Of a DNA stretch of 64,000 bases, positions 17,689-56,955 are shown piece by piece. The stretch lies in the IMG/VR virus record IMGVR_UViG_3300008259_005066, positions 62,001-126,000 of that record. One strand, written 5' to 3'. Each line of letters begins with the position of its first letter. The stretch's first letter is position 1. The notes beneath the pieces are model-generated. The model saw only the letters and a list, made by a program, of their open reading frames with translations, did no database searches and had not been told where the DNA came from. Both the position numbers and the translations under genes were made by a program.

Positions 17689-17703
17689 TGTTTCCTCCAT
17701 TAA

Positions 17704-27225: not shown

Positions 27226-27256
27226 TATTTATACAGGATTTTTTGAGAGTTGTCAA
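27226..27256 (-). promoter_or_regulatory. Superimposed sigma70 and T4-type late promoter for hsp20
   Basis: TTGACA-N17-TATAAA, where the -10 is part of TATAAATA. Confidence 0.75.
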
Positions 27257-31966: not shown

Positions 31967-32195
31967 ATCTCTGTCGGGCAAACATTTTACGGATGCGCCA
32001 TTTGATGTAAGCCCACCACTCAGAACGGGGAATATGTCTCATGCTCGTCTTGCCTCCACGACAATACCAATTACAGCCAGTGTCAAACCGGCCACCAATG
32101 CCGCACCGTTGCCAGATATCAATGACTCCATTGATAATATGACCACTGCGAACCAAATCATCAGATTCAAATTTTTTCTCCAGGTTCAAACCCAC
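31956..32195 (-). CDS. Hypothetical protein (start uncertain)
   Basis: ORF filling the gap after the ligase. Confidence 0.4.
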   Translation of the reverse strand: MGLNLEKKFESDDLVRSGHIINGVIDIWQRCGIGGRFDTGCNWYCRGGKTSMRHIPRSEWWAYIKWRIRKMFARQRYEV

Positions 32196-33549
32196 GGAAT
32201 CTCACGAATCGTGGAAATCTCAGTGAGTATGATCCGTCTTGGTTTTGTGTGACTGCGTCCGCTTGGATTTCAACCAATCGACCAAGTAGGTCATCGCGAG
32301 CGGTCCAGAAGTCATCCCTATCGCTATCAGACAAACCACTGCCAACATTAACACGAATATTTCTGCCATTGTCATCTCCTTCACAAATTATAGCACCCAA
32401 TCGCTTTTCGTTGCGACCAGTTCCTTGTTCGAAACCCACGATTTCCAAATCCACTGTTATGGTGGGTTTCCACTTCATCCAAAAAGACGTTCGCTTGCAC
32501 TCATAGGGCGCATCCACCGACTTGATCATGATACCTTCATAGCCGGCCGTGACAGCATCTTGGGCGAATCGATCCATGATGTCATGACCTTCTCCGGTGT
32601 CGAGATCCACTTCCAGTCCGGGCATGATACGGAGGCAATCGGTCTGCTCTTGTAGCGGTTCCATTGCCCGGTTAAGTATGTCCAGTCTCTTGTGATGTTG
32701 TGCGTTCCAGAACCCACGCTCAAAATCTTCCAGAGGAATGATATCAAAGATATGATAAACCATGCCATCAGTTTGGGCATCGCTTTTACGATGTGCTTGA
32801 CGCATGAGTTTCTGGAATGACTCTCCCACGATCTCACCATCCAACACAAATCTACCACCTGAGTTCAGTCCGTGACGGAACACAGCCCTGCAATCTTCTA
32901 TGGCTTCAGCGATCTGCGGAAAGTTGTCAAAGGGTTTGCCGTTGCGGCTGTAGAGGTTCACTGTGCTACCGCTGACCACTGCCAGCACACGCACACCATC
33001 CAGTTTACATTCGATACGTTTTCGACCTTTCATCTTGGCCGGATGATCGCCCGAGTCTTGCGCCAGTTGGCAAGTGAACACCGGTATCTTCCATTCCGAG
33101 TTACCCAGCACTTTGTTTAAGGTCTTTTCTGAAATACCACAGCGGAGATCTTTGATCAGCACACGACGGGCCAGGCCGTTCCACTCGTCTGAGTCAAAAC
33201 GACCGGCCAGTTCGTCGATCCTATCACGTGCCTTGTTGCCAGTGATGCTACGGGTTCGGAGGCCTTCTGTGAGAGCCCAGAACTCAGTCCAGGGATTGTC
33301 TTTTCCTGTGAGTCCTTGGGTTTCTGGAACCTTCTTCACACCATAGACGAAATAAGGATTGTAGGTCAGGTAGCAGTTGTATAAAAAACACTGCGCCCCT
33401 GCCGACCCTAATCGAGCCGCTACCAGAGCCTTTTCGATCACTGCTTCTTTGTGTAGCCTAGAGTCTGAGCCTTCGAGATCTTGTATCCAATCTGCCGCCA
33501 CTTTTAATCCATTGAATTCATCATTGTGCCAATCGCGTGCCTGTGTCAT
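32167..33549 (-). CDS. ATP-dependent DNA ligase
   Basis: KLDGVR, LDGEI, FDII, EGIMIK, W.KWK, SLRFPRF. Confidence 0.96.
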   Translation of the reverse strand: MTQARDWHNDEFNGLKVAADWIQDLEGSDSRLHKEAVIEKALVAARLGSAGAQCFLYNCYLTYNPYFVYGVKKVPETQGLTGKDNPWTEFWALTEGLRTRSITGNKARDRIDELAGRFDSDEWNGLARRVLIKDLRCGISEKTLNKVLGNSEWKIPVFTCQLAQDSGDHPAKMKGRKRIECKLDGVRVLAVVSGSTVNLYSRNGKPFDNFPQIAEAIEDCRAVFRHGLNSGGRFVLDGEIVGESFQKLMRQAHRKSDAQTDGMVYHIFDIIPLEDFERGFWNAQHHKRLDILNRAMEPLQEQTDCLRIMPGLEVDLDTGEGHDIMDRFAQDAVTAGYEGIMIKSVDAPYECKRTSFWMKWKPTITVDLEIVGFEQGTGRNEKRLGAIICEGDDNGRNIRVNVGSGLSDSDRDDFWTARDDLLGRLVEIQADAVTQNQDGSYSLRFPRFVRFRGFEPGEKI

Positions 33550-41167: not shown

Positions 41168-42778
41168 TTATCCTAGAGTGCTAACAGCGTATCGGAAACG
41201 GCCATTGGCCGTGATGGTGTAAGAGACTTCGATGTCAGAACCTACCTGGCTCACAGAAAGCGTGAGTCCGACAGGACCATTTTCAGTATAGTCATCAGTG
41301 AAAGACACAGGAAAAGTAGAACTGTCATCTATGTCTTCAGATACAATGACCAAGGTGCCGTAACGGACCTGAGTGGTTACTAGATCTTTGAAATTGTATC
41401 GCACTTCAAATGCTGAACCCAGCGCGGCAGGCAATGTCAACAAGGTGCCACTACCAACAGTTTTGTCTACCAGCACACCAGCTTCTTGTACCAAGGTGCC
41501 AAAGCGATATCTCTCGCCGGCTTCCATGGCAAAGACTTTTTTGTTGTCGATATTGATACGTGCTTTTAATTCATCTGCTGAAGAATCACGCTCAAACATA
41601 TCGCCAAAACTTACATTGTTGTCTGTGTCGATCAGTATGACGTTGAAATTGTCGGCGGCAGGATAGGCGCCGCCACGGAATTTGGTGGCCACGTCCAGGA
41701 ACATGTTGAATCCAGACATGTTGTTTTGCGCACCATCGATCTCGATGCCTTCGGCATAGATAGCGTCGAACAAGTTCTGTGTGATGCGGAAACCCTGCGG
41801 TCCTATATAGCCCGCAGTACCAGCACCAGTTCCTGTCAACAGCACACCTTGATACAGCGTGTTGAATTTGCTGTCAGTGACAGTGATACCAGAGATGGCA
41901 GCATCGCTGGATAAACCATAGGTCAGTCCTGAAAATTCGCAGGCCGTGAACGAAATATTCTCTGTGGGATAAGTTGTCGTGGATCCGAATGTGGCACCTG
42001 AGATGTCGTCTACATCGGTGTCAAGTTCGGCCTGCACCAATGGTCCAATGAATGCCACGTCTTGGAACAACACATTGGTGGCTTCCTGGATCGACACTAT
42101 GTTGAGTGTTTCTGCGGACTGGAAGCCCATGTCATAGATTTCTATGTTGGTAGGTGCAGTGGCATTGTTGTTGCCGATGTTGGGATAGACCTGCTGTAGA
42201 CTGTCTGCGGTCTGGGCCACATAAGTAGCAGTCAACGTGCTGTCACCAGTGGTGTCCAAGAATATGACCGAACTGCGGGCACCTTCGCCGTATAATTTAC
42301 AGAACGGGGGGATCTTTATGGTGGAAGTCACACGATACACACCAGCAGGGAAGAATATGCTACGTCTCACCTGTGGATTCTGTTCGCGGCAGAACATCTG
42401 GAACAGGGCACGGTTGATAGCATCAGTGTCGTCGCTGTCTCCGTCGCCCGTGGCACCAAAATCTTTGATCGATGCCATGTCATCCAGTTTGGATTGCAGT
42501 GTGCGCTCGATGGGGTCACCTGGTGTGGGGCCGGTCTGCACAGTGTATCCACCGGCTTCACCTTTGTAGGTGTAGGCTCCAGCTATGGCGAATATGTCAG
42601 AATATTGGGTGAGGATTTCAGTGTTGCCAATGGCAGGAGCACCTTCTTGTATGGTGCCATTGCCGATGAACAATCTGCGCTGGTCGATGACCCAGCCAAA
42701 CTCTGCGCCCGCTAGTTGCGGTAGATTTTCACTTAGACCTTTGCGTTGCGTGATACGCGATATCTGAACTATTGCCAT
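41168..42778 (-). CDS. Tail fibre/spike protein with pectate-lyase-like beta-helix
   Basis: SIKDFGATGDG..DDTDAINRA, FFPAGVY; N-terminal LPQLAGAEFGW. Confidence 0.82.
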   Translation of the reverse strand: MAIVQISRITQRKGLSENLPQLAGAEFGWVIDQRRLFIGNGTIQEGAPAIGNTEILTQYSDIFAIAGAYTYKGEAGGYTVQTGPTPGDPIERTLQSKLDDMASIKDFGATGDGDSDDTDAINRALFQMFCREQNPQVRRSIFFPAGVYRVTSTIKIPPFCKLYGEGARSSVIFLDTTGDSTLTATYVAQTADSLQQVYPNIGNNNATAPTNIEIYDMGFQSAETLNIVSIQEATNVLFQDVAFIGPLVQAELDTDVDDISGATFGSTTTYPTENISFTACEFSGLTYGLSSDAAISGITVTDSKFNTLYQGVLLTGTGAGTAGYIGPQGFRITQNLFDAIYAEGIEIDGAQNNMSGFNMFLDVATKFRGGAYPAADNFNVILIDTDNNVSFGDMFERDSSADELKARINIDNKKVFAMEAGERYRFGTLVQEAGVLVDKTVGSGTLLTLPAALGSAFEVRYNFKDLVTTQVRYGTLVIVSEDIDDSSTFPVSFTDDYTENGPVGLTLSVSQVGSDIEVSYTITANGRFRYAVSTLG

Positions 42779-43514: not shown

Positions 43515-43844
43515 TTAGACTCGGAAACTTTCTCCGCAACCACAGCGGTCGCGTTCGTTAGGGTTGATGAAATCAAATCCTTCGTTGAGGCCGTTTTTGA
43601 CCCATGCCATGGTCATGCCTTCGAGATAAGGACGATGCTTGGGATCCACATATATGCGCACACCGTTGATGTCATAGTGTGCCACGCAGTGCTCTCGCCC
43701 TTGATCCGTATCCACGTATTCCAGGGTATAGGCCAGACCCGAACAGCCTGTGGTGCGCACACCAATCTTGATGCCTAGGCCGCGTCCACGTCGGGCGATG
43801 TTTTCCTTAACGCGGCAGGCCGCTTCATCAGTGACTGTGATCAT
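43515..43844 (-). CDS. iscA: Fe-S cluster A-type carrier
   Basis: GCSGLAY, NPN, CGCGESF. Confidence 0.96.
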   Translation of the reverse strand: MITVTDEAACRVKENIARRGRGLGIKIGVRTTGCSGLAYTLEYVDTDQGREHCVAHYDINGVRIYVDPKHRPYLEGMTMAWVKNGLNEGFDFINPNERDRCGCGESFRV

Positions 43845-44220
43845 GTTTTTTGCGATAGTCTTCTATGGCAGCCTTGATGGCATCCTCGGCCAAGATGGAG
43901 CAGTGGATCTTGACTGGTGGCAATGCTAGTTCTTCTGCGATTTGGCTGTTTCGGATTGTTCCTGCTTCATCAAGGGTTTTGCCTTTGACCCATTCTGTGA
44001 CCAGGCTCGAGCTCGCGATAGCCGATCCGCAGCCATACGTTTTAAAGCGTGCATCTGTAATAATACCTGTATCATCGTCCACCTTGATCTGTAATTTCAT
44101 TACATCCCCGCAAGCAGGTGCCCCAACCATACCAGTGCCAACGGTAGGATCAGACTTATCAAGAGCACCAACATTACGGGGGTTTTCATAGTGATCAATG
44201 ACCTTTTCTGAATAAGCCAT
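43828..44220 (-). CDS. iscU: Fe-S cluster scaffold
   Basis: MAYSEKVIDHYENPRNVG, ACGD, GCGSA, LPPVKIHC. Confidence 0.98.
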   Translation of the reverse strand: MAYSEKVIDHYENPRNVGALDKSDPTVGTGMVGAPACGDVMKLQIKVDDDTGIITDARFKTYGCGSAIASSSLVTEWVKGKTLDEAGTIRNSQIAEELALPPVKIHCSILAEDAIKAAIEDYRKKHDHSH

Positions 44221-44588: not shown

Positions 44589-45596
44589 TTATCTACGCTC
44601 GCGGCCTAATGCTCGGGCTGGTAGTTCTTCAGCATCTACATCGAGATTGGCATCTAGGCTGAGGTCTGGAGTTTCACCGGTGTCAGCACCGGATACATCT
44701 CCGGTAGGAAGGGTAGCGGCTCCTGCGGCGCCAGCATCTTGTCCGGGAACCACTGGGGCTTGACCTGTGAGCACACCTTGTGCGGTTTCCAGCTGGGTCT
44801 TGGAACCCTGGAGGCCCTGGATGAGACCTTGTAGTGCGGCTGTGCAATCATTGTTAAACTGTTGTGCTTGATCCATACCAAGATCGTTACGGATCGAATC
44901 TACAAGTGCTGGCAAATCTTTGAACTGCATGGCCGAAACTTGTTCAATCATTTTTTGAACTTGGTCAACCATGTCTTGTGCGGCCAATACCACTTGAGCC
45001 TGTTGTATCTCGCTGGCTTCTTTGAGCCGGCGTGCTCGTTTGCCTTCCATGGCTGATGCCGTGGCTGTTTTCAACATCTGTTGTAGACGTGTGGCCTGCT
45101 GAGGATCTTTCATGGCAGCACCAATGCCAGCGGCAAAACCTGCCATGGCTTTCTTTTGGGTCTGATCCAAGGTCTTGCCCAGGGCGGCCTGTGATACTGC
45201 GCGAGCCAAAGGATTGGCCTGCGTGCCAGTGGCGGCAGCGGCTTTGCGTATTCCGCCCGACATAGATTTGGCGTCTGCTTGTGCGGCGGCAGCGGCCTGT
45301 CGTGGATCTTGTTGTGCCATGGCCATGCCAGGAGCGGCACCAGGTTGAGATTCTCGTATCCTGGACTCTAGAGCCTGTTCCATGACCACCATCTTTAGAT
45401 AAGCAGGATTCTTTTCACTGCGATGGAATTGTGGTGTGCCACGATGCTCACGGATCAGCCCGCGGATTTTTTTCAACATCTCTTTGGCCGTCTTGACGCT
45501 GACAGCGCCGACGTCTAACTGTTGACCAAAGTAACTTTCAAGCACTTTGCGTGTTTGTTGTGTTTTGGTTTTTGAGTCCAATTCTTGCAGTTTCAT
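44589..45596 (-). CDS. Helical protein, putative head scaffold/internal protein
   Basis: A/Q-rich helices, L-x-E sites, TAAATA upstream. Confidence 0.6.
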   Translation of the reverse strand: MKLQELDSKTKTQQTRKVLESYFGQQLDVGAVSVKTAKEMLKKIRGLIREHRGTPQFHRSEKNPAYLKMVVMEQALESRIRESQPGAAPGMAMAQQDPRQAAAAAQADAKSMSGGIRKAAAATGTQANPLARAVSQAALGKTLDQTQKKAMAGFAAGIGAAMKDPQQATRLQQMLKTATASAMEGKRARRLKEASEIQQAQVVLAAQDMVDQVQKMIEQVSAMQFKDLPALVDSIRNDLGMDQAQQFNNDCTAALQGLIQGLQGSKTQLETAQGVLTGQAPVVPGQDAGAAGAATLPTGDVSGADTGETPDLSLDANLDVDAEELPARALGRERR

Positions 45597-46304: not shown

Positions 46305-46336
46305 GATCTTCCTTCGTTATGGATTTATTTATAGAT

Positions 46337-47065: not shown

Positions 47066-47449
47066 TTAGGTTGTGAGTTTGAAACCAGCGTTTGTGGCTG
47101 AGTCTAACTGGAAACCTGTGTAGGTGATGTTGGCTGCTGACAAGAAAGCGGCAGCGTTTGCGAATGCGCCTGTAGGATATACAGCCACTGACAATGCTAC
47201 GCCGTCAACTTGATACATAGCAACTGTGGATGTTTGCTGGATAGCCTGGATCACGTTTGCAACGTATTCTGCTACACCGCCTTCGCCGTTGATGCTGTTG
47301 TTAGCAACTGCACGGAAGAAGTCAAGTTTTGGACCTTGAGGCTGGACAGGAACACCGGCCAACGAAGTGGAAGGTGCGACTGGACCATTCTGTGTGTCTA
47401 GCGCGAATACTGGTTGCGAATCACCATTGGTGCGTGTAAATTGTGCCAT
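47066..47449 (-). CDS. Putative abundant virion structural protein
   Basis: Own TATAAATA promoter, strong SD and terminator; small A/G/T-rich protein. Confidence 0.65.
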   Translation of the reverse strand: MAQFTRTNGDSQPVFALDTQNGPVAPSTSLAGVPVQPQGPKLDFFRAVANNSINGEGGVAEYVANVIQAIQQTSTVAMYQVDGVALSVAVYPTGAFANAAAFLSAANITYTGFQLDSATNAGFKLTT

Positions 47450-47520
47450 TTTAAATCTCCTAATAAGTGGCCTTAGCGGGCCTACTTTTATTTATACCGA
47501 AATGGTGAAATCGGGGGCTA

Positions 47521-49398
47521 TCAGGCTAGATCAGGATTGTTGCGGGCAAAGTTGGCTTGGCTGAAACGCATGCGATCCACGTATTTCATGCCCTGGCCCA
47601 CATAACCTTCGTGTCCGGGCTCGTCGTTGATGGATGCCTGCACATCATGTGCTTGGCTGTCTAACTGTCGCACCACTTGATTCTTCAAGGCGCTGAGATC
47701 CAAGAATGTCTGGAACACAGCGGCCACGCCCTGTTTGTTGAGATTGGCCCACTCAAATATGCGCGGTGCCTTGGCTGGTTCTCGTTCCTGCACCCAGGGA
47801 CCAAATCCCTGTATCAAGTTATCATAACTGCCAGCACGCACACGGGTGTTGATATACTGTTTCATCAACTGTGGTAAGTTGGTGATCTTGCGGGCACGCA
47901 GTTCTGCAGGGTTGAACAGCGCATCTATGGCCGCACCTTTGGATTTCAGTAGATCCTGTGTTTTCTTTACGGTCTTGGCGTCGAGTTTTATTTGCTGTGG
48001 TTCTCGCAGGCTGGGGTCCAAGATCAACAGGCCCGGAACCGGCTTCAGTGCCGCCGCACGTATGGGAGTGGCTGCCGCACCTGGCGCATCTAACTGTGTG
48101 TGGACGACCACTGCGGCATCACTGGCCGCGATCTGGCGACCAAGATCGCTGTCAGCATCCACTGAATATTTCACTGTGTTGGGCTGGAACACCCATTTGC
48201 CATTCTCTTGTTGAGGTTGTGCGCTGTAGAGCAAGTCTCCTTGAACATAGCCTCTGAAATCTGGAGGTGTGGCTGCTCTCAACAACGGAAACAGTTTTTG
48301 ATATAGTCCTATGAGTTCGCCACGCTCGCCGCCTCTGGCAGTCATGATGCGGGCGATCATATCAGGCGAAGTGGCCAGACCATCATAGCCCTTGGCCAGG
48401 AAACCGGCCTTGTCAGTGAGCACAAAATCACCGTTGGATTTGCGACCAAAGATGATAGCGGGTTTGCCATCCCATTTCACAGTGGCAGTGTCTGGTTGCT
48501 GTGCGGTATTTACAATGCCTGTGAGTGCTTGTTGTGCGCCGCGACTGCCCATGTCAAATACCATGTCTTCGGGATGCTCGATGCGCACACCTTCAGCGAT
48601 GATTTGCATGCCCTGATTCACGATCCTGTCGCGCAGGCGAGCCAAGAAATGCACTTCGGCTTCTTCTAAATTTTCATCAAAGGGCTGGCCTTCACGTTCC
48701 ATGTGCGCACGGAAGTCTGCTATCTTGCTGTCTTTGTTTGGATCCATTTTGAGAGCACGCATGATGCTCTCCACGGAATAGAGGTCTTTGGCCGATGCGG
48801 TGGGATTCAGCAACAGTTTGGCCACCGCGTCTGGATCGTCGGTGACAATGTCATTGGTGTTGCGATTTGCGATACCATCATTCTGATTGAGTTTGAAACC
48901 CATGGATTTGGCCATGGAGTTGATCATGATGTTGCGCAGGGCACCTTTGTAGGCACTGGCCGGATCGCTACGCAACACGAACTGATTCCAGCGTGGTTTA
49001 TTTGCGAACATGAAATCGGTCTGCACAAACCCACGACGTGGGTCACCACCAATGGCAGTGAGGAAATGCACAGATATTCCGGACTTCTTGATGTAGCGTT
49101 GTGGATCCACTCCTTGCTGTTTGGCCCAATCTCGCAGTCGATCTATCAATTGTTCTTTGGAGATTTTTGTGGCATCTATCTGCAGATCCAGATCACCTGA
49201 TGATTCCTTGCGACCGGTGGAACCCAACCAGCGTGCCGGTTGTCCATCTATGGAGTCTTTTTCTGTGGTAAAGTCAATGCCAGTGATGGGTTCTAGCCAC
49301 TGCACAGTGGGCATGATGTCGGCTTGCGCTATGCGTTGCGTGATGACCTGTCCTTGATCATCCTTGAATACGTTGCCACCTTCTAGTAATCTCATCAT
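47521..49398 (-). CDS. Fusion of a Pol-beta-type nucleotidyltransferase domain and a ligase-like KxDG domain
   Basis: LGSTG...SGDLD...QTD; TVKWDG.P...QGDLL; ATGA-coupled start 49398. Confidence 0.7.
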   Translation of the reverse strand: MMRLLEGGNVFKDDQGQVITQRIAQADIMPTVQWLEPITGIDFTTEKDSIDGQPARWLGSTGRKESSGDLDLQIDATKISKEQLIDRLRDWAKQQGVDPQRYIKKSGISVHFLTAIGGDPRRGFVQTDFMFANKPRWNQFVLRSDPASAYKGALRNIMINSMAKSMGFKLNQNDGIANRNTNDIVTDDPDAVAKLLLNPTASAKDLYSVESIMRALKMDPNKDSKIADFRAHMEREGQPFDENLEEAEVHFLARLRDRIVNQGMQIIAEGVRIEHPEDMVFDMGSRGAQQALTGIVNTAQQPDTATVKWDGKPAIIFGRKSNGDFVLTDKAGFLAKGYDGLATSPDMIARIMTARGGERGELIGLYQKLFPLLRAATPPDFRGYVQGDLLYSAQPQQENGKWVFQPNTVKYSVDADSDLGRQIAASDAAVVVHTQLDAPGAAATPIRAAALKPVPGLLILDPSLREPQQIKLDAKTVKKTQDLLKSKGAAIDALFNPAELRARKITNLPQLMKQYINTRVRAGSYDNLIQGFGPWVQEREPAKAPRIFEWANLNKQGVAAVFQTFLDLSALKNQVVRQLDSQAHDVQASINDEPGHEGYVGQGMKYVDRMRFSQANFARNNPDLA

Positions 49399-49978
49399 AT
49401 GGCCTGCGAAACTGTGGTGGACTTGATTTTGCCTGCGGCATCCTGTGAAAGACTGTTGTGCAATGGTGTGCCGGCGATGACCTGTTGGCCGCTGGCACTG
49501 GTCCAACGACCATTGGCCCAGGTGTAGATTTCGTCAGGAATCTCGGTAGTTCCTGCCCTGCCGCCACGCACCATCACATTGTATCCGTTAGGTATTTCCG
49601 GAGCCACTGCGGTTTTGCTGACTTTGTAGGCGGGCAAAAAATGCTTGGCCAGATATTCACGCATCTGTTCTATGGCTGGTTGGGTGATATACTTGTCCAT
49701 GTTGCGCTCATCCACAGCGACCTGTCCTTGCATGGCTTGCTCTAACCAGGCAGCCGCTCGTTTTTTGTATTCATCCGCATCCATGACCTGTCCAGCAGTC
49801 TTGCCAGCGTTTATTTTCTTGGCCTGACGCCGGGTATTTTGCCCATGGCGCCTTTGATCGCGGCTCCGGCCTTGCCCATCATGGCCGAACGGCTTTGGGC
49901 CATGCGATCTTGCTCGGCACGCCCAATGGTGGCCAAATCTTGGAAAATACCTTCGTTAGTGACCTGTTTAACTTTCAT
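49395..49978 (-). pseudogene. Hypothetical gene broken by a frameshift/deletion near 49827
   Basis: MKVKQVTNEG...KIPGV switches frame to QAKKINAGK...MDADEY. Confidence 0.6.
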
Positions 49979-50213
49979 CGGTGCGTCTCACGGTCCTCGT
50001 GAATTTTGACGCATCCCGCATGCGTATGGCGTTGAGTAGCTTGCGCTGGAGATTTTCTGCCTGCTCTGGATCATAAGTGGCATCGATCTGCTCCATGAGC
50101 CTGATGGCGCCGGCAATGATGTTTGAAGCACGATTTTCTATCACGTGCCTGCGATCACGCTCGATATACATAGCATCGAGTTCTTCTAATATACTGCGGG
50201 TCTTTTTGTGCAT
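49968..50213 (-). CDS. Hypothetical protein
   Basis: 81-aa ORF, TAAATA upstream. Confidence 0.75.
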   Translation of the reverse strand: MHKKTRSILEELDAMYIERDRRHVIENRASNIIAGAIRLMEQIDATYDPEQAENLQRKLLNAIRMRDASKFTRTVRRTDES

Positions 50214-50267: not shown

Positions 50268-51320
50268 ATGATAAGTCAACGTAAAGTTTCAAGTCACAGC
50301 CAATGGCAACCATTGAAAGAAGTATGGGTAGGTGGCACTTATCCTGCAGATTTTTACCAGCATCTTGGCAACAAATCCCACGATATTTTTGCAAAAATCA
50401 CTGAAATTACCAACAAAGATTTTGACAATCTAACAGACACATTGGAAAAATTAGGTGTCACAGTAGTCAGGCCTCAATTCGATCGTATAGACGACTTTTT
50501 AGACGAACATGATCATTTGCTTAAACCACCGGTAAGTCCATGCGACATAGCACTGACACTAGGAGATACTTTGCATCTCATGCCTCAATACACGTCCGAA
50601 GTAAATCCCTATCAACGTGCTGTAGATGATTATCGCCAAGCAGGACAAAAAATACATGTCATTGACCGTGCTACACCAGAACCATGGGCCTGGATGATTT
50701 TTGCCAGCGTGGTGCGGGCCGGAAAAGATATACTGATAGATTATCAGCCAAATATACCAGAATCAAAAAAATACACGTATCTGGTAGCACAGGAATTAGC
50801 CAAAGATTATAGAGTGCATCTCAGTGGCACTGGAGATCATAACGACGGAGTTTTTTGTCCGATTAGGCCAGGGCATATTTTTACGTCTCATTATAGAAAG
50901 GTCTATGACTCAAGTTTTCCAGGATGGTCTGTGTTCCATCTGCCAGACACCACATATAAAAATCTCCAACACGTTGGTATAGCCGACAAGTGGTATCTAC
51001 CCGGAGTAGACTACGGGCATTTCAACGCAGATATAATGGCCGTGGCAGAACAATGGTTAGGCAATCCGCAAGAAACTGTTTTTGAAGTCAATATGTTGGT
51101 AGTAGACGAAAAAAATATCATATGTGGCGCTTACGATGAAATGGCTTTTCAATATTTTGAATCTCTAGGTATCACTCCGCATTTGGTAGAATTTCAATCT
51201 AGATATTTTTGGGATGCCGGAATACACTGCGTTTGTAGTGATATACATCGATCAGGGGGCCGGGAGGATTATTGGCCTGAGCGCGGGGACAGCGGCATCT
51301 ATTATATAACGGAGTGGTAA
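50268..51320 (+). CDS. Second amidinotransferase-family protein (divergent)
   Basis: SQWQPLKEVWVG, SPCD, HNDG, EVNML, DAGIHCV. Confidence 0.82.
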   Translation: MISQRKVSSHSQWQPLKEVWVGGTYPADFYQHLGNKSHDIFAKITEITNKDFDNLTDTLEKLGVTVVRPQFDRIDDFLDEHDHLLKPPVSPCDIALTLGDTLHLMPQYTSEVNPYQRAVDDYRQAGQKIHVIDRATPEPWAWMIFASVVRAGKDILIDYQPNIPESKKYTYLVAQELAKDYRVHLSGTGDHNDGVFCPIRPGHIFTSHYRKVYDSSFPGWSVFHLPDTTYKNLQHVGIADKWYLPGVDYGHFNADIMAVAEQWLGNPQETVFEVNMLVVDEKNIICGAYDEMAFQYFESLGITPHLVEFQSRYFWDAGIHCVCSDIHRSGGREDYWPERGDSGIYYITEW

Positions 51321-51791
51321 ATGAAAGAACGAATACGTTTTGAATTCGACATAAGATCAGAATTTTGGGATAAATTTCCCATGATAGAAATTTCCGTTGA
51401 TGATCGTATCAAATGCACAAAAACTCTAGATCAAAAGCAATGCAAATTATCCTTTGAGGATGATCTAGAATTTGATCGCCCACACACAGTATCTTTAAAG
51501 AGATTTAACAAAACAGATGATCAATGCGTGATTGATAACAATGGATCTCGGTTCGATCAATATGTTATCTTGAATCAAGTTTGTATTGATGGTATCGATG
51601 TGCAGAATCTCATCTGGCACCGCAGTTGGTTTGAACCTATCTATTCCACAGTATGGAAACAACAACAGATAGATGCTGGAGTTGCGTTGGAAGAAAAAAT
51701 CATCGGAGAAACTTGGTTAAGTCACAATGGGACATGGAAGTTTGAATTTTTCAGTCCTTTTTATAAATTTATTATCTCACAATTTGAGTAA
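51321..51791 (+). CDS. Hypothetical protein
   Basis: 156-aa ORF in operon. Confidence 0.7.
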   Translation: MKERIRFEFDIRSEFWDKFPMIEISVDDRIKCTKTLDQKQCKLSFEDDLEFDRPHTVSLKRFNKTDDQCVIDNNGSRFDQYVILNQVCIDGIDVQNLIWHRSWFEPIYSTVWKQQQIDAGVALEEKIIGETWLSHNGTWKFEFFSPFYKFIISQFE

Positions 51792-51797
51792 ATCATC

Positions 51798-52628
51798 ATG
51801 ACATGGCAATTAACTAAAACAACAAAAACTCTCTTTCCTGTGAAAGATCAAAAAATGATATCATTGCGACAGTCATGGTATCACGATGCTCAAAGACAAA
51901 GCACCTATCAAGACTTTTTCCCGATGGCAAAAGAATGGTTCACATCAACCAAGATCAACGATATACAAGGGTGGGACGCTTTCCCTCATGTGGACGTGAC
52001 CATGGGATGCACACATTATATAGAAAGTTTTGTCCAAAAGCATGGATGGAATGGATTTCAGATACTCAAGAACGAATATGCTTATTATACCCTAATGGGC
52101 AAACATGGAGTAGAAGTCAATGACCTTGAGCCCAACAAGCCATTGATCATCACCATGCCCCATTGGACTTTTTGCGATGTCAGACCGGAGTGGGAGGATG
52201 TTCTAAGAATCTGCGAACAGAGGATGATTGATATCCACATCGATATGGCATGGATTGTCACTGCCAAAGATATCCATCTAGATCTCAATCATCCCTGCAT
52301 CAAAAGCATTGGTGTGAGTCTCAGCAAATTGAGCCTACAATGGAATCGAGTAGGACTACGATTCAGCAGGCAAAAATCCATGGATTCTGTGACAATATTC
52401 AACGACTACTACAAAGATACCAACACAGTGATCACTTCTATCGGTTGCTATTGGATTGATAATTTTGAAAGAGATTATCTATGGAATTCCTATGGCGGTC
52501 AACATCAAGAAATTTGTAGGACTTTAGATATCTTGCCAACAAAAATAATACATGTGGCCAAAGATAAAACAGGACAATCGTTAGGTATCGGTAAGATGCT
52601 TGGAGATGCGACTCCACACAGCGTATAA
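51798..52628 (+). CDS. PLP-dependent fold-type-I-like enzyme (truncated aminotransferase-like)
   Basis: IDMAW, SLSK, RVG motifs. Confidence 0.6.
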   Translation: MTWQLTKTTKTLFPVKDQKMISLRQSWYHDAQRQSTYQDFFPMAKEWFTSTKINDIQGWDAFPHVDVTMGCTHYIESFVQKHGWNGFQILKNEYAYYTLMGKHGVEVNDLEPNKPLIITMPHWTFCDVRPEWEDVLRICEQRMIDIHIDMAWIVTAKDIHLDLNHPCIKSIGVSLSKLSLQWNRVGLRFSRQKSMDSVTIFNDYYKDTNTVITSIGCYWIDNFERDYLWNSYGGQHQEICRTLDILPTKIIHVAKDKTGQSLGIGKMLGDATPHSV

Positions 52629-53189
52629 GATGTAGCGGGTAGTTCCGGCTGAAACTACACTCTCTGACCTATGAGAGATTTTGTCTGTTCTATCATGTTG
52701 GATTAGATACCCTGAGTTGTGCTCACTGGGTATCAGGATCGGAGTGTGTTCCGATCCAAAGATTGTTCCCACCCCAGATGAAGTGTAGAGATATATTTGC
52801 ATGGCAACATCGATGTCAGGATTATCAGTGTGCCAACCAATTTCATATCCCGCTTCATCTTTCCAGAGCGATACTCCCCAGAAATGTTTATAGGGGTCTG
52901 TAAACGTTTCATTGATCAGATCTGTCGCAGAATCAAATATTTCATGCAACTCTTCTATCACTGTATCAAAATCCCAAGTGATTTTTTGTCTAGGAAGAGT
53001 TTCTTGACCTTCCACTGTTTGCCATTTGTCATTGGAAACCGATGAAACATACTGATTGAGTTTTTGTAATATCGCAAGATCTAAGACATCTGTTATCTGA
53101 TACAAATCTGCTATAGGGGTAGACAGTCTGTTGGAGATGCAAGACGCTAGATGTTTCTTGTTGTTCTCGATCAAATCCTGATCTATCAT
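52581..53189 (-). CDS. 2OG-Fe(II) oxygenase-like protein
   Basis: WHTDN, QIYL, NSGY, distal H, R. Confidence 0.72.
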   Translation of the reverse strand: MIDQDLIENNKKHLASCISNRLSTPIADLYQITDVLDLAILQKLNQYVSSVSNDKWQTVEGQETLPRQKITWDFDTVIEELHEIFDSATDLINETFTDPYKHFWGVSLWKDEAGYEIGWHTDNPDIDVAMQIYLYTSSGVGTIFGSEHTPILIPSEHNSGYLIQHDRTDKISHRSESVVSAGTTRYILYAVWSRISKHLTDT

Positions 53190-54583
53190 GACTGTTTGAT
53201 TTGTCCTAATAACTGTTTGAGTTTGTTTGATTGCACATCGGCTGTGACCTTGCCAACATCTTCAGCTGGTTCACTGTTGTCATCCTTCATAGTAGACTTG
53301 GCCTTGATTGATTCGTAGATGTTGGGTTTCTTGACAAATCCAGAACTTTGCTGTTGGTCTTCGCCTAAATCTCTGATACGCAGGCTTTCAATGTCAAACT
53401 CTAAATCTACCTTCTGTCCCACTCCACTCGATGAACGAGTCTTCATCAACTGTATCTGATAGCGACCACGTTCACGCATGGCTCGACTTGTGAAGATACC
53501 AAACACATTATCTGCTGTGTTGATCTTGGAAATACCACCCGATATATGGCTATGATCGAACTCAATCTCTTCCACTGCCGCACGATTCAACTGCGAAGCA
53601 GTGACAAACAATACATTGAGTTCTTTAGCCAAGTTGCGCAGTTCTTCTGAAACATACTTGTCTTTGACGAATAAATCATTGGGGCTAACTTTGGCACTCA
53701 CCGGCATGATCAAGTCTAGATAATCTACGCATAAAAAATCCACACGTTTCTTTGTCTTCACTTGCAGTTCTTTGAGATATGCACGGATATCATTCACTGT
53801 GCTCTGTGCTGGCATGTATTTGATCTGCAAGGCGCCGGCCTTCTTCTGCATCATCTTGACTTTCATTTCCACTGTATCGATATCTCGAAAAATTTCTTTG
53901 CTAGACGTATTGGTCATCATGGAGTCGATGCGCATGGAACAAAGACCTTCTGACAGTTCCAGCGTGATGTAACAACCGTTGAGCCCGGCCTGTGCCCAGT
54001 TCACTGCCAAGTTCTGCATGAACAAACTCTTGCCAGAACCTGAACCTCCTGCGAAAATCTGCAATTCACCTCGGTTGAATCCACCATACAGCAATTTGTC
54101 CAGGGCAGGCCATCCAGTAGAGTTCTGTCCATTATTATTTTTCAAGGCCAGCAGTCTCGATCGCGGATCTTCAAAGTAATCTGTGCCCAGATCCTTGGTC
54201 AATGATATTTGCACGGCATCCTTAATCAACTTCTCCACAGGATCAAAATTGCCCTTTTCCAAAAGGTCCGCCGACTTAAGGATCGCACGTTCCAATTCTT
54301 GTCGACGAGTGAATGATTCAAACTCTTCCATGAACCAGTCGAGATGCCCTTCATTGATATCGGGTATTTCTTGTAGGTCAACATTGGTCACTGCTCGAAC
54401 CTGTTTGCGATCAGGCAAAGTTTTGTGTTGATCACAGTGTTCTCGGATAAACTTCGCGGCACTACGCAGGCTGCGATCAAAGTTTTCTTCATTGAATATG
54501 TTCTGCACTCGCACGTAACTCTGTGCGTCCTGCATCATAAACTCCAGGAACAACTTTTGGACTTCTACGGAATAATCTTTCAT
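53186..54583 (-). CDS. Replicative helicase (DnaB/T4 gp41-like)
   Basis: GGSGSGKS, LELSE, VDYLD, TASQLNR, KTR. Confidence 0.95.
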   Translation of the reverse strand: MKDYSVEVQKLFLEFMMQDAQSYVRVQNIFNEENFDRSLRSAAKFIREHCDQHKTLPDRKQVRAVTNVDLQEIPDINEGHLDWFMEEFESFTRRQELERAILKSADLLEKGNFDPVEKLIKDAVQISLTKDLGTDYFEDPRSRLLALKNNNGQNSTGWPALDKLLYGGFNRGELQIFAGGSGSGKSLFMQNLAVNWAQAGLNGCYITLELSEGLCSMRIDSMMTNTSSKEIFRDIDTVEMKVKMMQKKAGALQIKYMPAQSTVNDIRAYLKELQVKTKKRVDFLCVDYLDLIMPVSAKVSPNDLFVKDKYVSEELRNLAKELNVLFVTASQLNRAAVEEIEFDHSHISGGISKINTADNVFGIFTSRAMRERGRYQIQLMKTRSSSGVGQKVDLEFDIESLRIRDLGEDQQQSSGFVKKPNIYESIKAKSTMKDDNSEPAEDVGKVTADVQSNKLKQLLGQIKQS

Positions 54584-55269: not shown

Positions 55270-55973
55270 AGCCATCCTAACTCCTGCATGCGAGGACACA
55301 ATACTTTTTCATACCAATGATGATTGCCCGCAGATCCATAGTGACCGTGCCATCCGTGAGTATCAAAGTCCACGGGACGATGGACATTTTTGTTAGTGCT
55401 GAAGTAGGTATCTTCAAACAGGATACTGTGCGGATCTGCTAAAAATCTTCTCTGTATACTGGCCAGTGTTGGCCACTCGGTCTTGGGCTGGAATGGTTCG
55501 GCGAGATTCACGATGAGATAATTGCTAGTCCATCCTTGGATATATCTAGTCAATAAAAATAATTCTCTAAGAGCCTGTGCTTCTTGCCAACTACGATTCC
55601 ATGACATTACATAGCCTTGGCCCAGCTGATGAGTAGTGACTTGCCTGAGCCCATCATGTTCTCGTAAGCATGGTTGATCTATGGGTTCTAGATTGCCAAA
55701 AAATCTATGATAACTAGGAGCCATACCATCATAATCATACACAGTAAATCTCTCGATAGGGGGCACACCCACTATTACATAATCGTTAGGACTAAATCCA
55801 GAACCAGCCACTATGAGATGTGATATGCTATCTACGTTGTTTCCTGGCCAACTGTAGTTTTCTACACTATCAACTTGCAAGGCAGCAGCCATTAAGCCCC
55901 ACCAAGAATCCTTGACATCTACACAGAATCCTGGTGTGCTATAACTGTCGCCATACACGATCAATCTAGACAT
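55266..55973 (-). CDS. SGNH-like hydrolase
   Basis: YGDSYS, NYSWPGNN, HGHY. Confidence 0.7.
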   Translation of the reverse strand: MSRLIVYGDSYSTPGFCVDVKDSWWGLMAAALQVDSVENYSWPGNNVDSISHLIVAGSGFSPNDYVIVGVPPIERFTVYDYDGMAPSYHRFFGNLEPIDQPCLREHDGLRQVTTHQLGQGYVMSWNRSWQEAQALRELFLLTRYIQGWTSNYLIVNLAEPFQPKTEWPTLASIQRRFLADPHSILFEDTYFSTNKNVHRPVDFDTHGWHGHYGSAGNHHWYEKVLCPRMQELGWL

Positions 55974-56955
55974 GGAGTTTCCTCATGAGATTCTTCCGAG
56001 CCATTTCAATTTTTATTTTACTGGTGCATCGATGCTGGAAAATATTCAACAGCGTGGCCAATCGTCCTTGGCGTATCACTGCATCGTTAACGTCCTTGAC
56101 ATCCGCTGGCCAGTCTGGTATGCTCACTGCCCAACCCAGTTCTATAGCACAATCTATCAACTTGAGACCGGCCTTGTCTTGATCGGGCACCACTGTGACT
56201 TCTCGACCAATACTGCGTATCAGTCTCGCTTGGGTATCATTGATTTCAGCATGCAATACTGCCAATCCACCGATGCTGAGAGCATCAAATATGCCTTCCA
56301 CCACGATCACATGCTGCCAATCTGGTCGCTGTAGATCTGTGCCAAACACATAGCCCTGTTGCATGTCGTGGACGTAGCGAGGATTATGATCATCAAAAAA
56401 TCTACGTGTGTGTCCTACTATGCGTCCATCATAGGTAAACGGTATGATCACACCTTGCCTACGACTGAATTTGTCATCAGGCCGGCCATGGATCATACCT
56501 ATGGGATAATCCTCGGGCACACAACGATCTCTGAGATACTGCCAATGCACTGACATGTCGCGATCCACCAATGCGAATTCTTCCGGCAGTTCTCGATCTT
56601 CAAACTCGATGCCCTGCACCACATTGGCAGTGCGCTGTCGATCATCCAGTATGCCTTGGATGTTTCGATGTTTGAGGCTTTCGAGATTTATATATTCTAT
56701 TTCTTGTTGTGGAACATTAAGCCATTGCAACAGTCTGCGAGCCTTGAATGAAAGATTGCGACCCAGGATGAAGCTGGCAGTGAATCCGCAATTGAAACAG
56801 TGGAAACTCCAACCTTGGTCAGTGGCCTTGATTCCACCGCGCTGTCGTCGATCCTGGCTTTCACCATTGTGAACACAACACGGAGCATTGAATGAAATCC
56901 AGCCAGAACTTGTGCTTTTGCGTTTGGCTGGTAGATAAGAAAATATGTCGATCAC
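55966..56955 (-). CDS. DNA primase (zinc finger + TOPRIM)
   Basis: CCVH...CFNC, VEGIFDA, PDQDKAG, KDVND. Confidence 0.92.
   Translation of the reverse strand: MIDIFSYLPAKRKSTSSGWISFNAPCCVHNGESQDRRQRGGIKATDQGWSFHCFNCGFTASFILGRNLSFKARRLLQWLNVPQQEIEYINLESLKHRNIQGILDDRQRTANVVQGIEFEDRELPEEFALVDRDMSVHWQYLRDRCVPEDYPIGMIHGRPDDKFSRRQGVIIPFTYDGRIVGHTRRFFDDHNPRYVHDMQQGYVFGTDLQRPDWQHVIVVEGIFDALSIGGLAVLHAEINDTQARLIRSIGREVTVVPDQDKAGLKLIDCAIELGWAVSIPDWPADVKDVNDAVIRQGRLATLLNIFQHRCTSKIKIEMARKNLMRKLHV

What the first reader, a model, noticed from the sequence alone, without database searches (positions are those of the whole stretch)
47521..49398. Nucleotidyltransferase plus ligase-like fusion that looks like a virion-packaged polyprotein
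Seen: the N-domain has GS-x7-DLD plus a distal Asp (QTD), the Pol-beta superfamily signature. The C-domain has KWDG and QGDL, resembling ligase/capping motifs I and III. Each domain is preceded by (L/I)-x-E sites (LLE, NLEE, IAE), and the gene lies among late genes. Known: T4 prohead protease cuts after (L/I)-x-E. Inference: two injected nucleotidyl-transfer enzymes acting in RNA repair, protein NMPylation or counter-defence signalling.
Basis: partly seen in the sequence, partly recalled or inferred. Interest (0 to 1): 0.62.

Follow-up and report, generated by a model that had tools for sequence, protein, structure and literature searches.

The report
Phage polymerase-X plus ligase-like fusion enzyme
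This jumbo-phage gene fuses a miniature repair-type DNA polymerase to a previously unrecognised ligase-like enzyme (DUF6267), most likely a one-protein "fill the gap and seal the nick" DNA repair tool, and the ligase half may be the long-missing ligase of marine T4-like cyanophages.

Summary
The N-half (residues 1-262) folds confidently (pLDDT 92.6). It matches family X DNA polymerases specifically (Z 8.3-10.2 over palm plus thumb); other Pol-beta-type transferases score Z 6.4 or less. D69, D71 and D128 are invariant.

The C-half is Pfam DUF6267 (pLDDT 94.7). Its 26 best structural matches are all RNA or DNA ligases or capping enzymes. Ligase motifs I-V are invariant, starting with K308 in KWDG. 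It has a 105-residue helical insert and no OB domain. In relatives an intein sits directly after KWDG.

The two halves also occur as adjacent overlapping genes, fused in reverse order, or alone. They usually lie just downstream of the replicative helicase.

Best reading: a gap-filling and nick-sealing DNA repair enzyme, analogous to the Phaeocystis globosa virus PolX-ligase fusion.

The polyprotein and virion idea is not shown. (L/I)xE sites are not enriched, and the cyanophage orthologue is absent from three virion proteomes. It is not excluded either: two of the sites are about 98% conserved, some homologues carry T4 capsid-targeting-like leaders, and the phage encodes a T4-type prohead protease.

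DUF6267 is a core gene of cyanomyoviruses, which lack any recognised ligase.

The parts
47521..49398 (-). Whole gene, 625 aa (P0001): PolX-like domain fused to a DUF6267 ligase-like domain
   Evidence: More than 4000 full-length homologues of 612-641 aa at 65-97% identity, on contigs up to 515 kb.
48613..49398 (-). N-domain, residues 1-262: minimal family X (Pol-beta-like) polymerase fold, palm plus thumb-like subdomain
   Evidence: AF2 pLDDT 92.6. Foldseek top hits are Tth PolX, pol beta and pol lambda. VIA top 10 are all PolX, Z 7.0-10.2 (nine of them 8.3 or more); ASFV PolX aligns 154 of 176 residues. No Pfam hit.
49186..49224 (-). GSTGRKESSGDLD (residues 59-71): nucleotide-binding GS loop and the two catalytic Asp, D69 and D71
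   Evidence: G59, T61, G62, G68, D69 and D71 invariant in 69 homologues. Coordinates checked.
49015..49023 (-). QTD (residues 126-128): third catalytic Asp, D128
   Evidence: Q126 and D128 invariant. Lies on a palm strand of the model.
47524..48612 (-). C-domain, residues 263-625: DUF6267, a divergent covalent nucleotidyltransferase (ligase-like) with no OB domain
   Evidence: Pfam PF19782, E 1.3e-39. AF2 pLDDT 94.7. The 26 best VIA matches are all ligases or capping enzymes, Z 4.7-7.4 over 140-194 residues. BFVD search.
48466..48477 (-). KWDG (residues 308-311): ligase motif I, with K308 the predicted AMP-accepting lysine
   Evidence: K, D and G invariant in 129 full-length homologues and kept in cyanophage T4-GC71. 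The intein in relatives P0134, P0145 and P0156 starts directly after KWDG.
48232..48243 (-). QGDL (residues 386-389): ligase motif III, D388
   Evidence: D invariant in 63 diverse and 129 close homologues. Lies on a strand of the model.
47659..47979 (-). Helical insert of about 105 residues (474-580) between motifs IIIa and IV, specific to DUF6267; contains invariant K572
   Evidence: Helices at C-domain 212-318 in the model. K310 (C-domain numbering) invariant. Not matched by ligase structures.
47572..47610 (-). EGYVGQGMKYVDR (residues 597-609): ligase motifs IV (E597-G598) and V (K605, R609)
   Evidence: E, G, K and R invariant. Also kept in cyanophage, HTVC008M, Melnitz and DLP6 homologues.
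49381..49389 (-). LLE (residues 4-6): conserved [LI]xE directly before the invariant GGNVFK
   Evidence: [LI]xE in 126 of 129 homologues. E6 invariant in 69 N-domains. The Atu_ph07 homologue starts at MGG with no leader.
48592..48600 (-). IAE (residues 267-269): conserved [LI]xE at the start of the DUF6267 core, a few residues past the gene boundary seen in split homologues
   Evidence: [LI]xE in 127 of 129 homologues. Split N-domain proteins end at about residue 260. Cyanophage versions lack this leader.
49395..49784 (-). Upstream 129-aa ORF whose stop overlaps the start of the gene (ATGA), suggesting translational coupling; function unknown
   Evidence: No PHROG or Pfam hit.
53186..54583 (-). 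DnaB-like replicative helicase upstream on the same strand (context)
   Evidence: Pfam DnaB_C, E 3.7e-21. The same helicase-then-module order occurs in L003, HTVC008M, Melnitz, S-PM2 and P-RSM6.
32167..33549 (-). Canonical ATP-dependent DNA ligase of the same phage (context: the fusion is a second, distinct ligase-like gene)
   Evidence: phrog_114, E 4e-94. PF01068, E 1.2e-23.

Best explanation
The gene encodes one polypeptide with two nucleotidyl-transfer enzymes that work in sequence on broken nucleic acid, most likely phage DNA.

The N-terminal 260 residues are a stripped-down family X (Pol-beta-like) polymerase. It has a palm with catalytic D69, D71 and D128 and a thumb-like subdomain, as in the minimal ASFV Pol X. 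It lacks the 8-kDa lyase domain.

The C-terminal 360 residues (DUF6267) are a divergent polynucleotide-ligase-type adenylyltransferase. The motifs are I (K308 in KWDG), III (D388), IIIa (Y411), IV (E597-G598) and V (K605, R609). A family-specific helical insert of about 105 residues takes the place of an OB domain.

Proposed mechanism: the polymerase domain fills a short gap. The ligase domain, charged on K308 with AMP, then seals the remaining nick. This would be a single-protein gap-repair module expressed with the replication genes.

Shown here: both folds, invariance of the catalytic residues, and repeated gene fusion, fission and adjacency of the two parts.

Inferred: the substrate (DNA rather than RNA), the nucleotide donor (ATP or NAD+), templated synthesis, and timing of expression.
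For: N-domain:
- AF2 pLDDT 92.6.
- The top 10 of 48,161 PDB representatives are all family X polymerases. Pol beta scores Z 10.2 over 162 aligned residues; ASFV PolX Z 8.6 over 154 of 176. The next class (TUTases, CD-NTases, CCA enzymes) reaches only Z 6.4 or less over about 85 residues. Foldseek agrees.
- G59, D69, D71, H111, Q126, D128 and R155 are invariant.

C-domain:
- AF2 pLDDT 94.7.
- The 26 best VIA matches are all ligases or capping enzymes: NgrRnl Z 7.4 over 183 residues, REL1 6.5, Trl1 6.1, DNA ligases 5-6.
- The weak Foldseek PDB and BFVD hits outside the family are also ligases.
- Motif residues are invariant across 63 diverse and 129 close homologues and in cyanophage orthologues.
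- In relatives the intein is inserted directly after KWDG.

Functional linkage of the two halves:
- They are separate overlapping adjacent genes in L003 to L006.
- They are fused N-to-C in 44 of the 150 best representative clusters and in reverse order in two more, P0336 and P0342.
- In Atu_ph07 the N-domain gene overlaps an upstream gene from a different ligase family: a weak PF09414 match, named 'RNA ligase' in BFVD/UniProt.

Context: the gene or genes lie 1-3 genes downstream of the replicative helicase in the window, L003, Atu_ph07, HTVC008M, Melnitz, S-PM2 and P-RSM6.

Precedent:
- PgV-16T PolX is an N-terminal Pol-beta core fused to a C-terminal ligase, with polymerase, lyase and ligase activities shown in vitro (PMC5537341).
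- Phage YerA41 PolX plus ligase complete gap repair (bioRxiv 10.1101/2025.03.26.645540).
Against: - No biochemical data exist for any member.
- Sequence methods do not link either domain to PolX or to ligases. Pfam, PDB phmmer and profile searches were blank, and hhalign against the phage's own ligase was not significant.
- The ligase-fold Z-scores are modest (7.4 or less). The best matches are RNA ligases, and the domain lacks the OB fold and motif VI of DNA ligases.
- No UDG or ExoIII-type AP endonuclease was found in the 60%-complete record, so a full base-excision pathway is not visible.
- The phage already has a canonical DNA ligase.
- DUF6267 recurs fused or adjacent to NMNAT-like HIGH nucleotidyltransferases, and once to an Acb1-like 2H phosphoesterase. 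This hints at NAD-linked or RNA-end chemistry.
Confidence: 0.55

Rival explanations
1. The protein is a capsid-targeted precursor. The T4-type prohead protease cuts after E6 and E269, releasing a PolX-like and a ligase-like enzyme that are injected with the DNA, for example to repair or seal the incoming genome.
For: - The genome encodes an S77 (T4 gp21-type) prohead protease.
- [LI]xE is conserved in 126 and 127 of 129 homologues, directly before each conserved core.
- Stand-alone homologues carry leaders of variable length that always end in [LI]xE.
- Some leaders resemble the T4 capsid targeting sequence MKTYQEFIAE (PMC8442874): DLP6 MMKFTQFLAE, P0358 MRAQEFLTEE, P0216 MRASEFILES.
- Similar leaders occur on other proteins of this genome, including one next to the protease.
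- Leader-less homologues begin at the predicted mature ends: Atu_ph07 at MGG, cyanophage at M..HLEHLED.
- E6 and E269 are dispensable in those homologues.
- The leader is not tied to the presence of the N-domain.
- The 81-aa neighbour is homologous to a PA5oct virion protein, and TATAAATA motifs are nearby.
- The neighbouring cyanophage gene T4-GC190 was found in S-SM1 virions (PMC3037559).
Against: - This protein's own leader (MMRLLE) is only 6 residues and unlike the CTS-type leaders of the same genome.
- There is no overall enrichment of sites.
- NLEE is not conserved.
- Position is replication-linked in seven phage lineages.
- The prohead protease and head genes lie about 80 kb away.
- T4-GC71 is not among the virion proteins of three cyanophages, although those versions lack the leader.
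- No exact late-promoter motif lies upstream of the operon.
- No proteome exists for any leader-bearing member.
Confidence: 0.18
2. An RNA repair enzyme. The N-domain adds nucleotides to RNA 3' ends without a template, and DUF6267 is an RNA ligase that reseals RNAs such as tRNAs cut by host anticodon nucleases.
For: - The best structural matches of the C-domain are RNA ligases: NgrRnl, REL1, Trl1, T4 Rnl2 and Rnl1.
- There is no OB domain, as in RNA ligases.
- The Atu_ph07 partner is named 'RNA ligase'.
- One relative carries an Acb1-like 2H phosphoesterase domain, and another a HAD phosphatase-like domain, reminiscent of end-healing modules.
- T4-like cyanophages lack RnlA and PseT (PMC1079782).
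Against: - The N-domain matches DNA polymerases X over palm and thumb, not RNA-specific transferases.
- The Z-scores of RNA and DNA ligases differ by less than 2.
- Gene position is with the DNA replication genes.
- No polynucleotide kinase is consistently associated.
Confidence: 0.15
3. DUF6267 is not a strand-joining enzyme. It is an adenylyltransferase working with NAD or nucleotide metabolism, or in counter-defence, and its fusion to the PolX-like domain serves another nucleotide-transfer pathway.
For: - It recurs fused or adjacent to NMNAT/PPAT-like HIGH nucleotidyltransferases: P0337, P0395, P0407, P0408, P0381, S-PM2, P-HM1, P-RSM6 and DLP6.
- It is also found fused to Cu/Zn superoxide dismutase and to an Acb1-like domain.
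Against: - The full ligase motif set I, III, IIIa, IV and V is invariant.
- Its partners are a polymerase fold and, in Atu_ph07, another ligase family.
- Some long 'fusions' in metagenomic gene calls may be artefacts.
Confidence: 0.08

Closest known systems
PgVPolX of Phaeocystis globosa virus 16T (PMC5537341)
   Same: [quoted passage not shown] It was shown to fill gaps and seal nicks in vitro.
   Different: PgVPolX has 1093 aa, keeps the 8-kDa dRP-lyase domain and carries a canonical NAD+-dependent LigA-type ligase. Here the polymerase is minimal, with no 8-kDa domain. The ligase-like half is DUF6267, with no PF01653, PF01068 or PF09414 signal. The host is a bacterium and the virus a tailed phage.
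ASFV Pol X (minimal family X polymerase, 174 aa) with ASFV DNA ligase
   Same: Palm plus thumb only, with no 8-kDa or fingers-type DNA-binding domains. VIA Z 8.6, with 154 of 176 residues aligned. It works with a separate viral ligase in repair.
   Different: About 13-15% identity, with no sequence-level relationship detected. The phage domain has an invariant N-terminal EGGNxFK element and a helical tail of about 50 residues. ASFV's enzymes are separate proteins.
Rnl5-type nick-sealing RNA ligases (NgrRnl, DraRnl) and other ATP-dependent RNA and DNA ligases
   Same: Covalent nucleotidyltransferase fold with motifs I, III, IIIa, IV and V in order. As in RNA ligases, there is no OB domain. Best match is NgrRnl, Z 7.4 over 183 residues.
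   Different: A helical module of about 105 residues is inserted between motifs IIIa and IV, rather than an appended N- or C-terminal domain. Motif V reads K-x-V-D/N-R. There is no profile-level similarity.
Bacterial LigD (NHEJ polymerase, phosphoesterase and ligase in one protein)
   Same: Logic of combining a gap-filling polymerase and a ligase in one polypeptide for break repair.
   Different: The LigD polymerase is an archaeo-eukaryotic primase-type enzyme, not Pol X, and its ligase is a canonical PF01068 plus OB enzyme. No Ku partner was examined here. This comparison rests on my own knowledge.
T4 internal proteins and Alt (capsid-targeted, gp21-processed)
   Same: [LI]xE directly after a short N-terminal leader. 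The genome encodes an S77 protease.
   Different: This protein's leader is 6 residues and unlike MKTYQEFIAE. There is no evidence of packaging. It is a large, highly conserved enzyme (about 68% identity across thousands of homologues), unlike the fast-evolving internal proteins.

Membership tests
Pfam DUF6267 (PF19782) | Match to the family profile above the gathering score | tested here: met
   137.1 bits against a cut-off of 27; E 1.3e-39; residues 273-618 cover profile positions 4-373 of 376.
Family X DNA polymerases | Pol-beta-type palm: helix, G-S loop, strand with DxD, and a third Asp on a later strand | tested here: met
   GS-x8-DLD at residues 59-71 and D128. All are invariant and lie on the expected elements of the model.
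Family X DNA polymerases | Palm plus thumb (nascent base-pair binding) subdomain architecture, distinguishing PolX from other Pol-beta-superfamily transferases | tested here: met
   The top 10 VIA matches are all PolX, nine at Z 8.3-10.2 and D. radiodurans PolX at 7.0, over 151-183 aligned residues spanning model 1-219. Non-PolX transferases reach Z 6.4 or less over about 85 residues, palm only.
Family X DNA polymerases | Sequence-profile membership (Pfam DNA_pol_B_palm/thumb, or similarity to solved PolX sequences) | tested here: not met
   No Pfam hit on residues 1-262. PDB phmmer and profile searches found no PolX. Only a weak language-model lead to a PF14792 cluster, score 0.84.
Family X DNA polymerases | 8-kDa dRP-lyase / HhH DNA-binding domain (present in pol beta and lambda and in PgVPolX; absent in ASFV PolX) | tested here: not met
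   The domain starts at the palm. Only 24 residues precede the first palm helix.
Family X DNA polymerases | Template-directed dNTP incorporation on gapped DNA | not testable with these tools
   Needs a primer-extension assay with a D69A/D71A control.
Covalent nucleotidyltransferases (ATP/NAD+ ligases, capping enzymes) | Motif I KxDG with the nucleophilic lysine | tested here: met
   K308-W-D-G is invariant in 129 close homologues and in 61 of 63 diverse ones, and is present in cyanophage orthologues. An intein is inserted directly after it.
Covalent nucleotidyltransferases (ATP/NAD+ ligases, capping enzymes) | Motifs III, IIIa, IV and V in canonical order on the nucleotidyltransferase fold | tested here: met
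   D388, Y411, E597-G598, K605 and R609 are invariant and lie on strands in that order. The 26 best VIA matches all belong to the superfamily, Z 4.7-7.4. Residue-to-motif assignment is my inference; Z is modest.
ATP-dependent DNA ligases / capping enzymes | C-terminal OB domain with motif VI | tested here: not met
   The protein ends about 16 residues after motif V, and no beta-barrel is present in the model.
Known ligase Pfam families (PF01068, PF09414, PF01653) | Profile match | tested here: not met
   Genome searches hit only the separate canonical ligase at G000:C1:94467-95036, not this gene. Pfam scan.
Covalent nucleotidyltransferases | Lysyl-AMP formation and strand joining | not testable with these tools
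   Needs labelled ATP or NAD+ adenylylation and nick-sealing assays with a K308A control.
T4-type capsid-targeted, gp21-processed proteins | Phage encodes an S77 prohead protease | tested here: met
   PF03420, 95.5 bits, at G000:C1:190636-191055.
T4-type capsid-targeted, gp21-processed proteins | N-terminal CTS-like leader of about 10 residues ending in [LI]xE | tested here: inconclusive
   Here the leader is only MMRLLE, with [LI]xE conserved in 126 of 129 homologues. CTS-like leaders occur on some stand-alone homologues and on other proteins of this genome.
T4-type capsid-targeted, gp21-processed proteins | Presence and cleavage in virions | not testable with these tools
   The only indirect data: leader-less cyanophage T4-GC71 is absent from three virion proteomes (PMC3037559 Table S8).

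The most novel reading that the evidence does not exclude
DUF6267 is a previously unrecognised family of polynucleotide ligases. It has the covalent nucleotidyltransferase core with an internal helical module and no OB domain.

It is cyano-T4 core gene T4-GC71, present in all 16 cyanomyoviruses compared by Sullivan et al. It is the only ligase-like gene I could find in P-RSM6. It would therefore be the 'missing' DNA ligase of T4-like cyanophages and pelagiphages.

In a large clade of jumbo phages it has been fused to a minimal Pol X, giving a single-chain gap-repair enzyme. In some lineages the enzyme carries a T4-CTS-like leader and may be delivered inside the capsid.
Probability: 0.4. Interest if true: 0.8.

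Novelty: new variant of a known kind. Interest (0 to 1): 0.64.

Why it matters
- It gives a testable function to a very abundant unknown. DUF6267 has over 1000 clusters at 50% identity, and the fused form has more than 4000 relatives. It is a core gene of marine T4-like cyanophages (PMC3037559).
- Reviews have noted since 2005-2010 that cyanomyoviruses have no recognisable gp30 ligase and left open whether a distant homologue exists (PMC1079782, PMC2984593). This family is a concrete candidate.
- PolX-ligase fusions were known only from a giant eukaryotic virus. Finding the same logic built from a different ligase family in phages would be convergent evidence that coupling gap filling to sealing is advantageous for large viral genomes.
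- A compact polymerase-ligase could also be of practical interest as a reagent.

Tried and rejected
- **Near-identical DNA in phage records:** none.
- **Sequence and profile searches of the PDB:** blank or spurious for both domains.
- **hhalign of the DUF6267 profile:** not significant against the phage's own canonical ligase or against the Atu_ph07 ligase-like neighbour. In the latter only motif I aligned.
- **Foldseek of the C-domain against the PDB:** no hit below E 0.1, so the ligase call rests on the VIA search and the motifs.
- **Complex prediction of the N- against the C-domain:** no verdict (score 0.00). This is not evidence either way.
- **Base-excision partners in the 60%-complete record:** no UDG and no ExoIII-type nuclease. 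One sub-threshold AP_endonuc_2 match lies in a sugar-metabolism region.
- **Idea that the [LI]xE leader of DUF6267 is a docking element for the N-domain:** rejected. HTVC008M, Melnitz and DLP6 have the leader but no N-domain.
- **Idea that the intein lies in the polymerase domain:** wrong. It follows KWDG in the ligase domain.
- **Literature search for 'DUF6267' and 'cytitidyltransferase':** nothing found.
Full report
**What is there.** The finding is a real gene on the minus strand, window 47521-49398, 625 aa (P0001). The window is part of a 209.5-kb IMG/VR virus record judged 60% complete, so this is a jumbo phage. The ATG at 49398 overlaps the stop of an upstream 129-aa ORF by four bases. 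It gives the same N-terminus as the homologues, M-x-x-L-x-EGGNVFK.

- GSTGRKESSGDLD at residues 59-71. The spacing is GS-x8-DLD, not x7.
- QTD at 126-128.
- KWDG at 308-311.
- QGDL at 386-389.
- LLE at 4-6, NLEE at 243-246 and IAE at 267-269.

**How common it is.** The word search found more than 4000 relatives. The 120 best are nearly all full-length proteins of 612-641 aa at 65-97% identity, on contigs up to 515 kb. This is a strongly conserved core gene of a large clade of big phages, not a fast-evolving accessory protein. Pfam sees only DUF6267 on residues 273-618 (E 1.3e-39). PHROGs gives an unknown-function family, and the PDB sequence search is blank. Because these scans left the protein open, I used the exhaustive representative search once, on the C-half. 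It found 1075 clusters at 50% identity with E up to 0.001.

**N-domain.** With 69 homologues at 43-65% identity, AlphaFold gave pLDDT 92.6.
- Foldseek's best PDB hits are Thermus PolX, pol beta and pol lambda (E about 1e-4).
- An exhaustive alignment to 48,161 PDB representatives put ten family X polymerases on top. Pol beta scores Z 10.2 over 162 residues, pol lambda 9.4, TdT 9.3, and ASFV Pol X 8.6 with 154 of its 176 residues aligned.
- All other Pol-beta-superfamily enzymes (TUTases, CD-NTases, OAS, CCA enzyme, MenT) reach Z 6.4 or less and align only about 85 palm residues.
- So the domain is a palm-plus-thumb unit of PolX type, not just a generic Pol-beta nucleotidyltransferase. Like ASFV Pol X, it has no 8-kDa domain.
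- G59, T61, G62, G68, D69, D71, H111, Q126, D128 and R155 are invariant. So is an N-terminal EGGNxFK element with no counterpart I know of.
- Sequence profiles do not connect it to PolX. Family membership in the strict sense is therefore not shown, only the fold and the catalytic constellation.

**C-domain.** With 63 diverse homologues at 30-98% identity, AlphaFold gave pLDDT 94.7.
- Foldseek found nothing significant in the PDB, though its weak list is mostly ligases.
- The exhaustive alignment gave 26 top matches that are all covalent nucleotidyltransferases. Naegleria RNA ligase scores Z 7.4 over 183 residues, REL1 6.5, Trl1 6.1, a minimal DNA ligase 6.0, T4 Rnl2 5.9, T4 Rnl1 5.8, cellular and viral DNA ligases 5.0-5.6, and vaccinia capping enzyme 4.7.
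- Each Z is modest. The uniformity of the list, together with the motifs, makes the assignment solid.
- K308-x-D-G (motif I), D388 (III), Y411 (IIIa), E597-G598 (IV) and K605/R609 (V) are invariant in 129 close and 63 diverse homologues. They lie on strands in the canonical order.
- About 105 residues of helices (474-580) are inserted between IIIa and IV. The chain ends 16 residues after motif V, so there is no OB domain.
- In three relatives an intein begins directly after KWDG. Inteins characteristically sit in catalytic motifs of nucleic-acid enzymes; that generalisation is my own knowledge.

**The two halves belong together but are separable.**
- In relatives L003 to L006, a 250-aa N-domain gene and a 356-380-aa DUF6267 gene are adjacent, in the same order, overlapping by 4 nt. 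The split falls at about residue 260 of P0001.
- Among the 150 best representative clusters, 73 are DUF6267 alone and 46 contain both domains. In two of those, P0336 and P0342, DUF6267 comes first and the PolX-like domain last.
- Agrobacterium phage Atu_ph07 has the N-domain but no DUF6267. Its N-domain gene overlaps an upstream 324-aa gene that weakly matches PF09414 and is called 'RNA ligase' in BFVD/UniProt. The polymerase-like gene has thus paired with ligases of two different families.
- Cyanophage P-RSM6 has DUF6267 but no N-domain.

**Context.** On the same strand in the window lie:
- a Toprim primase (55966-56955) and a DnaB-like helicase (53186-54583);
- then, after a low-GC plus-strand island, the small-gene operon with P0001;
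- further on, a PD-(D/E)XK exonuclease, both ribonucleotide reductase subunits and a canonical ATP-dependent DNA ligase.

DUF6267 or the N-domain lies one to three genes downstream of the replicative helicase in L003, Atu_ph07, HTVC008M, Melnitz, S-PM2 and P-RSM6.

**Mechanism.** The simplest reading is a single-chain gap-repair enzyme. The PolX-like domain fills a short gap, and the ligase-like domain, adenylylated on K308, seals the nick.

This architecture has an experimentally proven precedent in PgV-16T PolX, which is an N-terminal Pol-beta core with a C-terminal NAD+ ligase and shows polymerase, lyase and ligase activities (PMC5537341). Phage YerA41 PolX and ligase jointly repair gaps.

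Substrate, cofactor and templating are inferred, not shown. I could not find UDG or an ExoIII-type nuclease in the incomplete record, so I do not claim a full base-excision pathway.

**The polyprotein and virion idea.** Evidence against:
- Only 5 [LI]xE sites against 3.55 expected.
- NLEE is not conserved.
- Gene fusion explains the two domains.
- Context is replication-linked.
- The head genes are about 80 kb away.
- T4-GC71, the cyanophage DUF6267, is a core gene in all 16 genomes of Sullivan et al. but is not among the virion proteins of S-SM1, S-PM2 or Syn9 (PMC3037559 Suppl. Tables 4 and 8).

Evidence that keeps it alive:
- The phage has an S77 prohead protease.
- LLE and IAE are conserved as [LI]xE in 126 and 127 of 129 homologues, exactly before each conserved core.
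- Stand-alone homologues have leaders of variable length that end in [LI]xE.
- Some leaders look like the T4 capsid targeting sequence MKTYQEFIAE (PMC8442874; PMC9026906). An example is DLP6 MMKFTQFLAE.
- Leader-less homologues start at the predicted mature ends.
- Similar leaders occur elsewhere in this genome.
- The cyanophage versions that were absent from virions lack the leader.

I put this model at roughly 0.18. It changes delivery, not enzymology.

**Wider implication.** Reviews state that cyanomyoviruses have no identifiable gp30 DNA ligase and that distant homologues might exist (PMC2984593, PMC1079782). P-RSM6 has no PF01068, PF09414 or PF01653 match, yet its T4-GC71 keeps every ligase motif residue. 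DUF6267 is therefore a concrete candidate for that missing ligase.

A caveat is its recurrent fusion or adjacency to NMNAT/PPAT-like nucleotidyltransferases (T4-GC190 and fusions). That could mean an NAD+-linked ligase, or a different chemistry altogether.

**Verdict.** The thing is a new variant of a known kind: a PolX-ligase fusion built from an undescribed ligase-like family.

Noticed in passing
P0134, P0145, P0156 (relatives): An intein (Pfam PF14890) is inserted directly after the KWDG motif of DUF6267 (…TIKWDG|CIHPDL…). These records look cut by contig ends.
   Followed up: partly
L018:3748-5645 (P-HM1), L001:7246-8343 (P-RSM6), L023:4176-5498 (DLP6); P0337, P0395, P0407, P0408, P0381: A cytidylyltransferase-like (NMNAT/PPAT-type HIGH) gene or domain follows DUF6267 in many phages. 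The cyanophage version (T4-GC190) is a core gene and was detected in S-SM1 virions with 25 peptide counts (PMC3037559). P0381 also carries ParB_N and Acb1-like domains.
   Followed up: partly
G000:C1:600-998, 995-1579, 152197-152835, 154483-155088 and 191140-192003 (same record, outside the window): Several proteins start with T4-CTS-like leaders (MRAQELLVE, MRSQEFISE, MMKTFKDYLAE, MKTFAEYLTE, MNKFEQLIE), the last one next to the S77 prohead protease. The first is followed by a twin-arginine-like RRDFLRGAGA stretch.
   Followed up: no
window 27226-27233, 36819-36826, 46326-46333, 47489-47496 (minus strand); 58606-58613 (plus strand): The T4 late-promoter octamer TATAAATA occurs 5 times against 1.1 expected (2 of 100 shuffles reach 5). 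One copy sits in the 71-nt gap right after the stop of the gene, upstream of the 127-aa ORF 47066-47449.
   Followed up: partly
window 50268-52628 (+): A low-GC island (0.40 against about 0.49) of three plus-strand ORFs (350, 156 and 276 aa) interrupts the minus-strand gene array between the helicase and the operon with the fusion gene. The first and third gave no Pfam hit; the 156-aa ORF was not scanned. The syntenic place in L003 holds a Mom-like gene.
   Followed up: no
window 43828-44220 (-): A 130-aa ORF reads like an IscU/NifU-type iron-sulfur scaffold (…GAPACGDVMK…YGCGSAIASSS…). This is judged from the sequence only. A NifU-family gene also lies near the module in L005.
   Followed up: no
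window 49968-50213 (-) and 44589-45596 (-): Small neighbours are homologous to proteins of PA5oct-like, Rak2-like, XaC1 and Phosso jumbo phages, some annotated 'virion structural protein'. This places the phage among distant T4-superfamily jumbo myoviruses.
   Followed up: partly
P0336, P0342 (about 940-990 aa; Atlas cluster of 63 members): Reverse-order fusions: DUF6267 first, then about 350 unassigned residues, then the PolX-like domain last.
   Followed up: partly
window 172-1494, 16444-17721, 27558-28757, 41168-42778: Other cargo in the window: a radical SAM protein, a UDP-glucose dehydrogenase, a ClpX-like AAA+ ATPase with zinc finger, and a tail-spike/pectate-lyase-like protein next to the exonuclease.
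   Followed up: no
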